DNA of 58,708 nucleotides, taken from assembly GCF_001194135.2 (NCBI RefSeq), contig NC_068987.1, positions 71,383,066 through 71,441,773 of the forward strand. The letters are read 5' to 3'. The DNA comes from Octopus bimaculoides (Eukaryota). This document shows, piece after piece, positions 22,431 through 22,504 of this stretch (position 1 is the first letter of the stretch; each line of letters begins with the position of its first letter). Position numbers and translations under genes: made by a program. The notes below the pieces were generated by a model. It made no database searches, was not told the DNA's origin, and worked only from the letters and a program-made list of their open reading frames with translations.

Positions 22431-22504
22431 TGGCCGGATAACTGAAGTGATGTCGGCGTGGGCTCCCACCCCGGCATCCGAAACTCGGAGTTTTATCATG
22501 GCTA
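22431..22504 (+). ncRNA. Type I hammerhead ribozyme fold, near-canonical core
   Basis: Stem I GAUAA/UUAUC extended by UGGCC/GGCUA; core CUGAAG(U); stem II GAUGUCGG/CCGGCAUC plus GUGGG/CCCAC; GAAA; stem III ACU/AGU; GUU cleavage triplet, cut predicted after 22492. Confidence 0.7.

What the first reader, a model, noticed from the sequence alone, without database searches (positions are those of the whole stretch)
22431..22504. Hammerhead ribozyme directly upstream of an R4/Dong-like (restriction-endonuclease) non-LTR element
Seen: all three hammerhead helices form in the correct order. Stem I is GAUAA(22437-41)/UUAUC(22493-97), then an internal loop, then UGGCC/GGCUA. The core is CUGAAG. Stem II is GAUGUCGG/CCGGCAUC plus GUGGG/CCCAC, followed by GAAA, a near-palindromic ACUCGGAGU stem III and a GUU cut site. 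Deviations: U22448 where A9 is expected, and an extra C22479. An R4/Dong-like reading frame (WLPNKFY...RGYMKRLKEYW) starts within 10 nt of the cut. Established: R2/R4-type elements are known for HDV-like 5' ribozymes; hammerheads are typical of Penelope-like elements and retrozymes. Inference: this may be an RLE-LINE lineage processed by a hammerhead. A type I cut leaves the core on the upstream RNA, so keeping it would need tandem, terminally repeated or circular templates, which is unusual for this clade.
Basis: partly seen in the sequence, partly recalled or inferred. Interest (0 to 1): 0.82.

Follow-up and report, generated by a model that had tools for sequence, protein, structure and literature searches.

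The report
Lone hammerhead ribozyme fused to LINE fragment
A 74-base sequence that folds like a hammerhead self-cutting RNA really does sit against a broken copy of a microsatellite-targeting jumping gene, but from this one decayed copy it looks more like an accidental passenger than that gene family's own processing signal.

Summary
The motif is real. Positions 22431-22504 (+) form a type I hammerhead layout: stem I is 6 bp, a bulged A, then 5 bp; the core is CUGAAGU; stem II is 8+4 bp; then GAAA, a 3-4 bp near-palindromic stem III, and GUU followed by the cut at 22492/22493. No dinucleotide shuffle of the window gave helices this strong (0/300). Only one core position is off consensus (U22448 for A9), because the "extra C" can be drawn as a stem II bulge. 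No Rfam hammerhead model matches, even at E<=10.

The downstream frame does belong to a restriction-like-endonuclease LINE that targets (ACAT)n. However, this copy lacks the 5'UTR, about 24 conserved N-terminal codons and the whole RT. It also carries a mariner insert and abuts an internal LTR-retrotransposon pol fragment rather than (ACAT)n.

At least seven relative subfamilies (25 fetched loci) have 5'UTRs of roughly 170-380 nt and no hammerhead. The helix proportions match Penelope-type hammerheads.

My best reading (about 0.5) is a passenger hammerhead RNA joined to LINE cDNA by template jumping. It has weak support from an ATGGCTAC start-codon look-alike (p about 0.02-0.07). Other copies in the source genome would decide, and I could not reach them.

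The parts
22431..22504 (+). Hammerhead-type (type I) motif, 74 nt. Stem I 5' strand 22431-22441; 5' core CUGAAGU 22442-22448; stem II hairpin 22449-22479; GAAA 22480-22483; stem III 22483-22491; U17 at 22492; predicted cleavage between 22492 and 22493; stem I 3' strand 22493-22504.
   Evidence: no Rfam match
22448..22448 (+). U at core position 9, where the consensus has A. This is the only unavoidable core deviation.
   Evidence: The hammerhead consensus CUGANGA is established knowledge and is used as the descriptor in PMC8557442.
22498..22509 (+). ATGGCTACCGAA, a look-alike of the relatives' ORF1 start (ATGGCTACGAAAG = MATKE). It lies inside the 3' strand of stem I and is out of frame with the LINE frame that follows.
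   Evidence: position-specific p about 0.02-0.07; anywhere-in-110-nt p about 0.1-0.2
22505..22869 (+). 5'-truncated or deleted ORF1 fragment of an (ACAT)n-specific RLE LINE. Solid homology covers 22514-22681, equal to residues 35-90 of the relatives' ORF1. Stop codon at 22745-22747.
22870..24148 (-). Decayed mariner transposon of about 1.28 kb. It has 35-nt inverted ends and flanking TA, and it splits the LINE-derived sequence.
   Evidence: (Transposase_1, 3e-14)
24149..24834 (+). 3' part of the RLE LINE: the ORF2 C-terminus with the KRPDIV... endonuclease motif (homology 24243-24566 = residues 671-779 of the 809-residue L002 ORF2), a stop at about 24597, and the 3'UTR.
24835..24892 (+). (ACAT)n microsatellite at the LINE 3' junction. 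The same repeat flanks the full-length relatives L002 (both sides) and L001.
21250..22430 (+). Internal protease-RT fragment of an LTR-retrotransposon pol, on the same strand. It breaks off in mid-frame (..SLTHFQ) at the first base of the hammerhead. No RNase H or integrase continuation follows downstream.
   Evidence: (RVT_1, 4.5e-21)

Best explanation
The 74-nt element is a genuine hammerhead-derived sequence of the metazoan Penelope/retrozyme architectural type. In this copy it carries one core lesion (A9 to U, or loss of A9) and is probably weakly active or inactive. It is not a native part of the neighbouring LINE.

The locus reads as a same-strand patchwork that ends at a LINE target site. 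From 3' to 5' it runs: the (ACAT)n target, the LINE 3' end, a LINE ORF1 piece, the complete hammerhead domain, and a piece of LTR-retrotransposon pol RNA.

The most economical origin is a single target-primed reverse transcription event. The RLE-LINE reverse transcriptase primed at (ACAT)n and then jumped end-to-end across several RNA fragments. One of these was a compact, nuclease-resistant hammerhead domain from an abundant ribozyme-bearing RNA. A mariner element inserted later.

Shown: the fold, the identities and boundaries of all the pieces, and the absence of hammerheads in relatives. Inferred: the template-jumping history and the Penelope or retrozyme source of the hammerhead.
For: 1. 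The LINE copy is not full length. Relatives conserve M-A-T/S..SYRRNRDYS..F.W..LN.D.Y before GYMKRLK. Here solid homology starts at residue ~35 (22514) by tblastn, and perhaps about ten codons further upstream on my own reading of the alignments. The whole 5'UTR and the whole RT are also missing.
2. Twenty-five loci from at least 7 relative subfamilies show no hammerhead, either by my descriptor or by Rfam. Where I read the upstream sequence, the 5'UTRs are roughly 170-380 nt. These subfamilies target (ACAT)n or (ACTT)n/(CCTT)n.
3. [quoted passage not shown] The fourth is inconclusive, because the unpaired base lies on the 3' side of stem II (C22478/C22479) rather than the 5' side described there. 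They are not those of a stable single-copy processing ribozyme.
4. The 5' flank is an internal pol fragment on the same strand, not (ACAT)n. The rest of that retrotransposon is absent downstream as far as 31467. Simple nested insertion therefore does not explain the layout, whereas serial template jumps explain all the junctions at once.
5. Continuous cDNA synthesis on non-continuous RNA templates is an established property of the R2 reverse transcriptase (Bibillo & Eickbush 2002, listed in PMC6765202). Ribozyme-bearing circular and linear RNAs are abundant in invertebrate tissues (PMC7229834).
Against: - The hammerhead piece is bounded within about 3 nt on both sides by the base of its own stem I. 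For a random capture this needs a special explanation. I invoke a trimmed structured fragment, which is untested.
- The 3' strand of stem I contains ATGGCTAC, identical to the ORF1 start of relative L002 (p about 0.02-0.07).
- The overall layout (ribozyme at the 5' end, internal deletion, intact 3' end) is what a non-autonomous internally deleted LINE derivative would look like.
- No Penelope-like coding sequence was found in the window.
- No other copy of this hammerhead could be retrieved, so its source is unknown.
Confidence: 0.5

Rival explanations
1. In this genome a sub-lineage of the (ACAT)n-specific RLE LINE, or a short internally deleted non-autonomous derivative of it, carries the hammerhead as its 5'-terminal module. 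The start codon AUG 22498 would lie inside stem I. Cleavage 5 nt upstream of the AUG would free the coding RNA from host co-transcripts, as the HDV-like ribozymes of R2 and L1Tc do, while uncleaved RNA would serve as the template that carries the ribozyme into new copies. This copy would then have suffered a deletion of about 60 nt after codon 4, the A9 lesion, and a jump onto a retrotransposon RNA at its 5' end.
For: - The hammerhead starts exactly where the foreign upstream sequence ends, and the LINE follows without a spacer.
- ATCATGGCTACCGAA matches the start of L002 (ATAATGGCTA-CGAA) with position-specific p of about 0.02-0.07.
- The outer part of stem I pairs with that start region.
- The element minus the mariner is about 1.13 kb, with a ribozyme at its 5' end and an intact 3'UTR and target junction. 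This is the architecture of R2 SIDEs and of NARTc (PMC6765202; PMC3383444).
- Precedents show that hammerheads upstream of, or overlapping, the body of a retroelement can persist. Examples are the Sm-alpha SINEs and the anole Penelope element, whose ORF starts in stem II and which uses unprocessed RNA for insertion (PMC11167929).
- 5'UTRs differ completely between most relative subfamilies, so replacement of a 5'UTR is common.
Against: - There is only one copy, and it is decayed.
- The start-codon match is not significant when the match is allowed anywhere in the first 110 nt (p about 0.1-0.2). It also needs a frameshifting deletion of about 60 nt.
- No relative has a hammerhead.
- The weak, palindromic stem III suits dimeric or tandem ribozymes rather than a single-copy processor.
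- The type I topology discards the ribozyme from the processed RNA.
- No (ACAT)n lies at the 5' junction.
Confidence: 0.3
2. Independent DNA-level events. A solo hammerhead, the relic of a Penelope-like element or retrozyme, lay in a retrotransposon pol gene. A 5'-truncated LINE insertion, with deletions of target DNA, later happened to abut it. There is no RNA-level chimera and no functional link.
For: - Most Penelope-type hammerheads in animal genomes are dispersed single motifs (PMC4209133).
- The window is dense with transposon fragments, microsatellites and assembly gaps.
Against: - It needs two separate coincidences, with both neighbours ending within about 3 nt of the base of stem I.
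- It needs a deletion of several kb to remove the rest of the LTR retrotransposon.
- In the one Penelope element studied biochemically, inserted copies extend more than 100 nt past the hammerhead. A 74-nt relic is therefore not a natural truncation product.
Confidence: 0.13
3. It is not a ribozyme at all. A GC-rich hairpin happens to be flanked by CUGA.G and GAAA and by complementary arms.
For: - No Rfam hammerhead model matches, even at E<=10 on 86 nt.
- Core position 9 is wrong.
- The MFE structure pairs part of the core.
Against: - None of 300 shuffles gave comparable helices.
- It is the only hit in the window and far stronger than the weak hits in 112 kb of other loci.
- Ten of the eleven specified core positions are correct, counting CUGA-GA plus GAAA plus U16.1.
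- The cleavage-site rule and all three helices fall in the fixed register.
Confidence: 0.05

Closest known systems
Penelope-like-element (PLE) hammerheads, the 'min-HHR' class and its variants with a small palindromic helix III (Cervera & de la Pena 2014, PMC4209133)
   Same: Both are type I. [quoted passage not shown] Both are frequently found as dispersed single motifs. In one PLE the ORF starts at stem II (PMC11167929), and here an AUG also sits at the first bases of stem II (22450).
   Different: There is no pseudo-LTR and no PLE RT or GIY-YIG coding sequence beside it or anywhere in the window's ORFs. The neighbours are an LTR-retrotransposon pol fragment and an RLE LINE. Position 9 is U. 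The unpaired base is on the 3' side of helix II.
HDV-like 5' ribozymes of R2 and L1Tc/NARTc, and R2 SIDEs
   Same: A small self-cleaving-type RNA sits at the extreme 5' end of a promoter-less, target-specific LINE-derived element. The copy is internally deleted and keeps its 5' ribozyme and 3' end, as SIDEs and NARTc do.
   Different: The ribozyme class and topology differ. HDV-like ribozymes cut at their own 5' edge and stay on the element RNA, whereas a type I hammerhead cuts near its 3' edge and is lost. Relatives of this LINE show no Rfam ribozyme at their 5' ends. The association here rests on one copy.
Schistosome Sm-alpha / Sj-alpha SINE-like retroposons with a hammerhead
   Same: These are non-autonomous retroposons, presumably LINE-mobilised, that carry a type I hammerhead near the 5' end.
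   Different: They are high-copy, tRNA/pol III-promoter-bearing and often tandem. Their hammerheads are canonical and proven active. Here the copy is single, with no tRNA-like part and an off-consensus core.
Metazoan non-LTR retrozymes (Cervera & de la Pena 2020, PMC7229834)
   Same: They carry a type I hammerhead and give abundant RNAs that LINEs or PLEs were proposed to mobilise. A LINE-hammerhead cDNA chimera would be a footprint of exactly that contact.
   Different: Retrozymes are tandem repeats of 170-400 nt, each with a hammerhead. Here only the bare 74-nt ribozyme domain is present, once.
Microsatellite-specific RLE LINEs (Dong in the R4 clade; some HERO families)
   Same: The downstream element has relatives with RT, CCHC and a PD..D..K endonuclease, and with precise insertion into (ACAT)n or (ACTT)n.
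   Different: The clade was not determined. The window copy lacks RT and the N-terminus.

Membership tests
Hammerhead ribozyme (type I) | Three helices around the core in the order I(5')-core-II-GAAA-III-H-I(3'), with stem I open | tested here: met
   Stem I is 6 bp, a bulged A, then 5 bp; stem II is 8+4 bp; stem III is 3-4 bp. Shuffle control gave 0/300.
Hammerhead ribozyme (type I) | 5' core CUGANGA (C3 U4 G5 A6 N7 G8 A9) | tested here: not met
   CUGAAGU: six of seven positions fit, with U22448 in place of A9. One substitution, or loss of one A, would restore the consensus.
Hammerhead ribozyme (type I) | 3' core GAA plus the A15.1-U16.1 pair, and a non-G nucleotide at position 17 | tested here: met
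   GAAA at 22480-83; A22483 pairs with U22491; U22492 is position 17. The extra C can be drawn as a bulge inside stem II.
Hammerhead ribozyme (type I) | Match to a curated covariance model (Rfam Hammerhead_1, _3, _II, HH9, HH10) | tested here: not met
   No hit at gathering score, or at E<=10 on 351 nt, or at E<=10 on 86 nt.
Hammerhead ribozyme (type I) | Conservation and compensatory changes among related copies | not testable with these tools
   There is no second copy in the window. The pattern is absent from the metagenome and GTDB collections. The window's ORFs are not in the protein collection.
Hammerhead ribozyme (type I) | Self-cleavage giving 2',3'-cyclic phosphate and 5'-OH ends at 22492/22493 | not testable with these tools
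   This needs an in vitro transcription assay.
Penelope-type hammerhead | Helix II of 7-8 bp, helix I of 4-5 bp with a poor loop 1, and a small palindromic or absent helix III | tested here: met
   Proportions here are 8 bp, 5 bp (inner) and ACUCGGAGU, against the description in PMC4209133.
Penelope-type hammerhead | Unpaired nucleotide at the 5' foot of helix II | tested here: inconclusive
   The unpaired base is C22478/C22479 on the 3' side. An alternative drawing is a U22448-C22479 mismatch with A9 lost.
Penelope-type hammerhead | Located in the pseudo-LTR of an element that encodes a telomerase-like RT and a GIY-YIG endonuclease | tested here: not met
   The flanks are an LTR-retrotransposon pol fragment and an RLE LINE. 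A Pfam scan of 6.8 kaa of window ORFs found only mariner Transposase_1.
Non-LTR retrozyme | Tandem repeats of 170-400 nt, each with a hammerhead | tested here: not met
   There is a single hammerhead in 58.7 kb and no repeat of the region.
RLE LINE (R2 superfamily: R4/Dong, HERO and others) | Reverse transcriptase followed by a C-terminal CCHC motif and a PD-(D/E)xK restriction-like endonuclease | tested here: inconclusive
   The full-length relatives L002 and L006 have RVT_1, CxxC..H..C and NKPDIV..IID..K, and L002 matches R2 proteins in the PDB at 6e-30. The window copy keeps only KRPDIVLWD..VVNV.. (24243-24566) and has no RT.
RLE LINE (R2 superfamily: R4/Dong, HERO and others) | Sequence-specific insertion into a repeat | tested here: met
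   The 3'UTR runs into (ACAT)n at 24835. L002 is flanked by (ACAT)n on both sides, and L001 has it at the 5' side.
R4/Dong clade specifically | Placement inside the R4 clade in an RT phylogeny | not tested
   No reference RT set was available. HERO also contains microsatellite-specific families (PMC4640811).
LINE with its own 5' ribozyme (R2 / L1Tc paradigm) | The ribozyme is present at the 5' end of independent copies and of related families | tested here: not met
   At least seven relative subfamilies (25 loci) have 5'UTRs without any hammerhead or Rfam ribozyme. Same-genome copies could not be examined.

The most novel reading that the evidence does not exclude
A lineage of microsatellite-specific restriction-like-endonuclease LINEs, or its short internally deleted parasites, has replaced its 5'UTR with a type I hammerhead whose stem I encloses the ORF1 start codon. 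That would be the first LINE known to use a hammerhead rather than an HDV-like ribozyme for 5' processing. A weaker version also has value: the locus is a fossil cDNA chimera showing that an RLE-LINE reverse transcriptase copied a hammerhead RNA in vivo. This bears on the open question of which autonomous elements mobilise animal retrozymes.
Probability: 0.3. Interest if true: 0.75.

Novelty: new member of a known kind. Interest (0 to 1): 0.42.

Why it matters
Ribozymes at LINE 5' ends are so far all HDV-like, and hammerheads in animals belong to Penelope-like elements, retrozymes and a few SINE or satellite families. A LINE lineage with its own hammerhead would break that division. It would also pose a real mechanistic puzzle, because the ribozyme is lost on cleavage.

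Even as a one-off chimera, a complete hammerhead domain spliced between LINE cDNA and another retroelement's RNA is physical evidence of contact between a LINE reverse transcriptase and hammerhead RNAs. This is relevant to how animal retrozymes are mobilised (LINEs versus PLEs; PMC7229834 and the 2026 preprint 10.64898/2026.07.22.740005).

As it stands the evidence is a single decayed copy, so the finding is a lead and not a result.

Tried and rejected
- **Rfam cmscan** at three stringencies on the window found no hammerhead. Scans of relatives' loci found no ribozyme.
- **Other copies of the hammerhead.** None in the window within 3 mismatches. A degenerate stem II/core pattern gave 0 hits in JGI metagenomes and in GTDB genomes.
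- **Reaching the source genome through its ORFs.** The 64-aa ORF is not on record. Ten further window ORFs are not in the 15-billion-protein collection. No nucleotide similarity links any fetched locus to the window.
- **Word-indexed protein search with the ORF1 fragment** found nothing. The full HMMER scan did find relatives.
- **Extending the LINE homology into the hammerhead.** MAFFT aligned TGG 22499 to the conserved W codon with an in-frame 18-nt gap. I rejected this as unsupported, because local-alignment scores against relatives are matched by 10-23% of shuffles.
- **The ATGGCTAC start-codon reading** is only marginal. I keep it as evidence for the rival explanation.
- **Simple nested insertion into an LTR retrotransposon** is rejected. 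No RNase H or integrase appears downstream as far as 31467.
- **A tRNA-derived SINE head** is rejected.
- **Pinning the exact end of the pol homology.** Pfam RT_RNaseH models gave no hit, and pol genes in the fetched loci gave no hit.
- **A natural 5'-truncated Penelope 3' end** is unlikely. In the one characterised PLE, reverse transcription starts more than 100 nt downstream of the hammerhead.
- **Paper look-up.** Lunse et al. 2016 on PLE hammerheads is not held.

Full report

The sequence at 22431-22504 is UGGCCGGAUAACUGAAGUGAUGUCGGCGUGGGCUCCCACCCCGGCAUCCGAAACUCGGAGUUUUAUCAUGGCUA.

- Stem I has two parts, 22431-36 with 22499-504 and 22437-41 with 22493-97. Because G22436 pairs with U22499, only A22498 is bulged, so stem I is 11 bp in all.
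- The 5' core is CUGAAG followed by U (22442-48).
- Stem II is 8 bp, a C/C mismatch, then 4 bp capped by GCUC.
- GAAA is at 22480-83.
- Stem III is ACU/AGU around CGG. It can also be read as a near-palindrome, ACUCGGAGU, that could pair between two molecules.
- U22492 is position 17, so cleavage would fall between 22492 and 22493.

The "extra C22479" is not necessarily a core defect. Pairing G22449 with C22479 and bulging C22478 gives a canonical C11.1-G12-A13-A14, so the only unavoidable core deviation is U22448 where A9 is expected.

The explicit three-way-junction structure evaluates to -26.0 kcal/mol against an MFE of -31.2. The region folds better than all 200 shuffles (z = -3.15).

A descriptor I wrote allows any base at position 9 and a 0/1-nt bulge. 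It finds only this site on both strands of the window, with helices of 5, 8 and 4 bp. In 300 dinucleotide-preserving shuffles of the window, hits with helices >=5/8/3 numbered zero and hits with >=5/5/2 averaged 0.033 per window. The 112 kb of loci fetched by then gave only weak hits, with stem II of 3-5 bp.

The negative side is that no Rfam 15 hammerhead model matches. This holds at gathering score, at E<=10 in 351 nt and at E<=10 in 86 nt. I attribute this to the 30-nt stem II and the core mismatch, but I could not test that. ARAGORN finds nothing tRNA-like.

It is one core position off consensus, and the curated models do not recognise it.

**2. What surrounds it?**

*Upstream.* Positions ~21250-22430 are an internal protease-RT piece of an LTR-retrotransposon pol on the + strand (RVT_1, 4.5e-21; translation). 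It runs through the familiar ..FLRLVNYY.. and ..W...C..F...K.. motifs and stops in mid-frame at ..SLTHFQ, which is the base before the hammerhead. Its RNase H and integrase are not found downstream as far as 31467. Its gag and LTR are not upstream either.

*Downstream.* The frame WLPNKFYRNTWDDSSRGYMKRLKEYWDKKYP.. has no word-indexed match. A full HMMER scan of 1.84 billion representatives gave 25 hits, mostly short ORFs that begin MATKE../MAS../MPPKPSY... Fetching their contigs showed what they are.

- L002 is a 4.0-kb element flanked on both sides by (ACAT)n. It has a 377-nt 5'UTR, an ORF1-like part with the GYMKRLK..WD motif, then RT (RVT_1), CxxC..H..C and NKPDIV..IDI..K.
- Its ORF2 matches R2 retrotransposon proteins of solved structure at 6e-30, over RT through the C-terminal endonuclease.

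The family is therefore a microsatellite-specific, restriction-like-endonuclease LINE. Whether it belongs to the R4/Dong clade or to HERO was not tested; both contain microsatellite-specific members (PMC4640811).

*The copy in the window.* tblastn places ORF1 residues 35-90 at 22514-22681 and ORF2 residues 671-779 at 24243-24566. The RT is absent. The 3'UTR runs into (ACAT)n at 24835, which is the family's target. Between the two LINE pieces lies a decayed mariner, complete at both ends (Transposase_1, 3e-14). It has 35-nt inverted ends at about 22868-22904 and 24115-24150 with flanking TA. Without the mariner, hammerhead plus LINE-derived sequence is about 1.13 kb.

**3. Is the hammerhead part of the LINE?**

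*Evidence against.*

- All relatives conserve about 35 residues before GYMKRLK (M-A-T..SYRRNRDYS..F.W..LN.D.Y; alignment A1). In the window, solid tblastn homology begins at residue ~35 (22514). On my reading of the alignments it may reach back to about codon 24 (~22508). So this copy lacks about 24 conserved codons and the whole 5'UTR.
- I examined 5' regions of at least seven subfamilies in 25 loci:
  - L001 and L002 ((ACAT)n target; 5'UTRs of about 250 and 377 nt)
  - L005-7 (5'UTR about 170 nt)
  - L008-12 ((ACTT)n/(CCTT)n target; about 380 nt)
  - L013-16
  - L017-24 and L025
- None of these has a hammerhead by my descriptor, and none has any Rfam ribozyme.
[quoted passage not shown] The fourth listed feature, an unpaired base at the foot of helix II, is present here only on the 3' side, so that match is inconclusive. 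These motifs are mostly found as dispersed single copies (PMC4209133). Such ribozymes are thought to work as dimers, which suits tandem elements and not a single-copy 5' processor.

*Evidence for.*

- The hammerhead begins within about 3 nt of the end of the pol fragment, and the LINE follows its last paired base within about 3 nt, all on one strand.
- The 3' strand of stem I reads AUCAUGGCUACCGAA, which matches the ORF1 start of L002 (AUAAUGGCUA-CGAA). If matches are allowed only at the start codons of 11 relatives, this has p of about 0.02-0.07. If they are allowed anywhere in the first 110 nt, p is about 0.1-0.2.
- Reading it as the true start needs a frameshifting deletion of about 60 nt.
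- MAFFT's alternative aligns TGG 22499 with the conserved W, but it is not statistically supported.
- The layout (5' ribozyme, internal deletion, intact 3' end) recalls R2 SIDEs and NARTc (PMC6765202; PMC3383444).
- In an anole Penelope element the ORF starts at stem II of its hammerhead, and unprocessed RNA is the insertion substrate (PMC11167929). Here too an AUG (22450) sits at the first bases of stem II, but its frame stops after 20 codons.

**4. Most likely mechanism**

The whole locus is a same-strand patchwork that ends at a LINE target. The order is: pol fragment, hammerhead, LINE ORF1 piece, (later mariner), LINE 3' end, (ACAT)n.

Nested insertion does not explain it, because the rest of the LTR element is missing. 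One target-primed reverse transcription event does. It would have primed at (ACAT)n, and the reverse transcriptase would then have jumped end-to-end over several RNA fragments. This behaviour is established for the R2 enzyme (Bibillo & Eickbush 2002, cited in PMC6765202). Hammerhead-bearing RNAs are abundant in invertebrate tissues (PMC7229834). A compact ribozyme domain closed by an 11-bp stem I is the kind of fragment that would survive trimming, which would account for its exact boundaries.

I give this passenger model, including its less specific form of "not native to the LINE", about 0.5. The other readings get about 0.3 for the LINE-owned or SIDE model, about 0.13 for purely DNA-level coincidence, and about 0.05 for "not a ribozyme".

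The identities and boundaries of all the pieces are shown. The jumping history and the Penelope or retrozyme origin of the ribozyme are inferred. No Penelope coding sequence is present in the window.

**5. Comparison with what is known, and novelty**

Known 5' ribozymes of LINEs (R2, L1Tc, Baggins, RTE) are HDV-like. Animal hammerheads belong to Penelope-like elements, non-LTR retrozymes, and SINE-like or satellite families. I found no report of a hammerhead owned by an RLE LINE.

As a hammerhead, the element meets the architectural criteria but fails the A9 and covariance-model criteria. As a Penelope hammerhead, it meets the shape criteria but not the context criterion. As a retrozyme, it fails the requirement for tandem repeats.

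I therefore file it as a new, probably crippled member of a known kind, the metazoan type I hammerheads, sitting in an unusual chimeric context. The more novel reading remains open.

**6. What would decide**

The source genome could not be reached with these tools. The decisive step is a search of that genome for the hammerhead and for its two junctions. This should be followed by a family consensus, a covariation test and a cleavage assay as both monomer and dimer.

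Noticed in passing
window 52430-54301 (- strand): A second, better preserved RLE-LINE 3' half. It has the RT C-terminus, CRICGQNGETVWHITSQC (CCHC), RKPDIVII..IIDIA..K and a 3'UTR that ends in (TAA)n/(TAC)n. This is a Dong-like (TAA)n target and a different family from the one next to the hammerhead.
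   Followed up: partly
window 37940-38199 (+), 41856-42934 (+), 43081-43302 and 45114-45449 (+): Further fragments of RLE-LINE ORF2 (RT C-terminus and endonuclease domain), partly interrupted by assembly gaps. None has a hammerhead nearby. The window is very rich in this LINE type.
   Followed up: partly
window 22870-24148 (- strand): A decayed mariner of about 1.28 kb, complete at both ends, with 35-nt inverted ends and a TA duplication. It is inserted into the LINE-derived sequence.
   Followed up: yes
window 22450-22512 (+): An AUG sits at the first bases of hammerhead stem II and opens a 20-codon frame (MSAWAPTPASETRSFIMATE*). This recalls the anole Penelope element, whose ORF starts at stem II of its hammerhead (PMC11167929). 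No protein search was left to ask whether this peptide matches a Penelope N-terminus.
   Followed up: no
L009:~4627-4690 and L017:~360-420 (5' ends of two relative subfamilies): A conserved 5'-terminal sequence, GGTTTTTTC(A/T)AACGTCTTTTACCTCA(A/G)GATAAA.., lies directly after the target microsatellite or flank in two otherwise divergent subfamilies. It could be a 5' functional element such as a promoter or an unrecognised ribozyme. There is no Rfam match.
   Followed up: no
L001, L002, L007, L009-L015: Relatives of one LINE family target different microsatellites: (ACAT)n, (ACTT)n/(CCTT)n and, in L007, a (GC)n/(AC)n tract. Each has its own 5'UTR. This looks like a case of target switching within a clade.
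   Followed up: partly
window 10446-10844 (-), 13127-14162 (+): Further Tc1/mariner-like transposase fragments, with an HTH-like N-terminus and a ..WPPNSPECIP..DYYVWG.. C-terminus. They gave no Pfam hit at E<=0.01.
   Followed up: no
whole window: There are nineteen runs of N (10-982 bp) and very dense (CA)n, (TA)n, (ACAT)n and (AAT)n microsatellites. This is a short-read draft of a repeat-rich animal genome, so junctions next to gaps should be treated with care. The hammerhead locus 21250-24900 itself contains no gap.
   Followed up: yes
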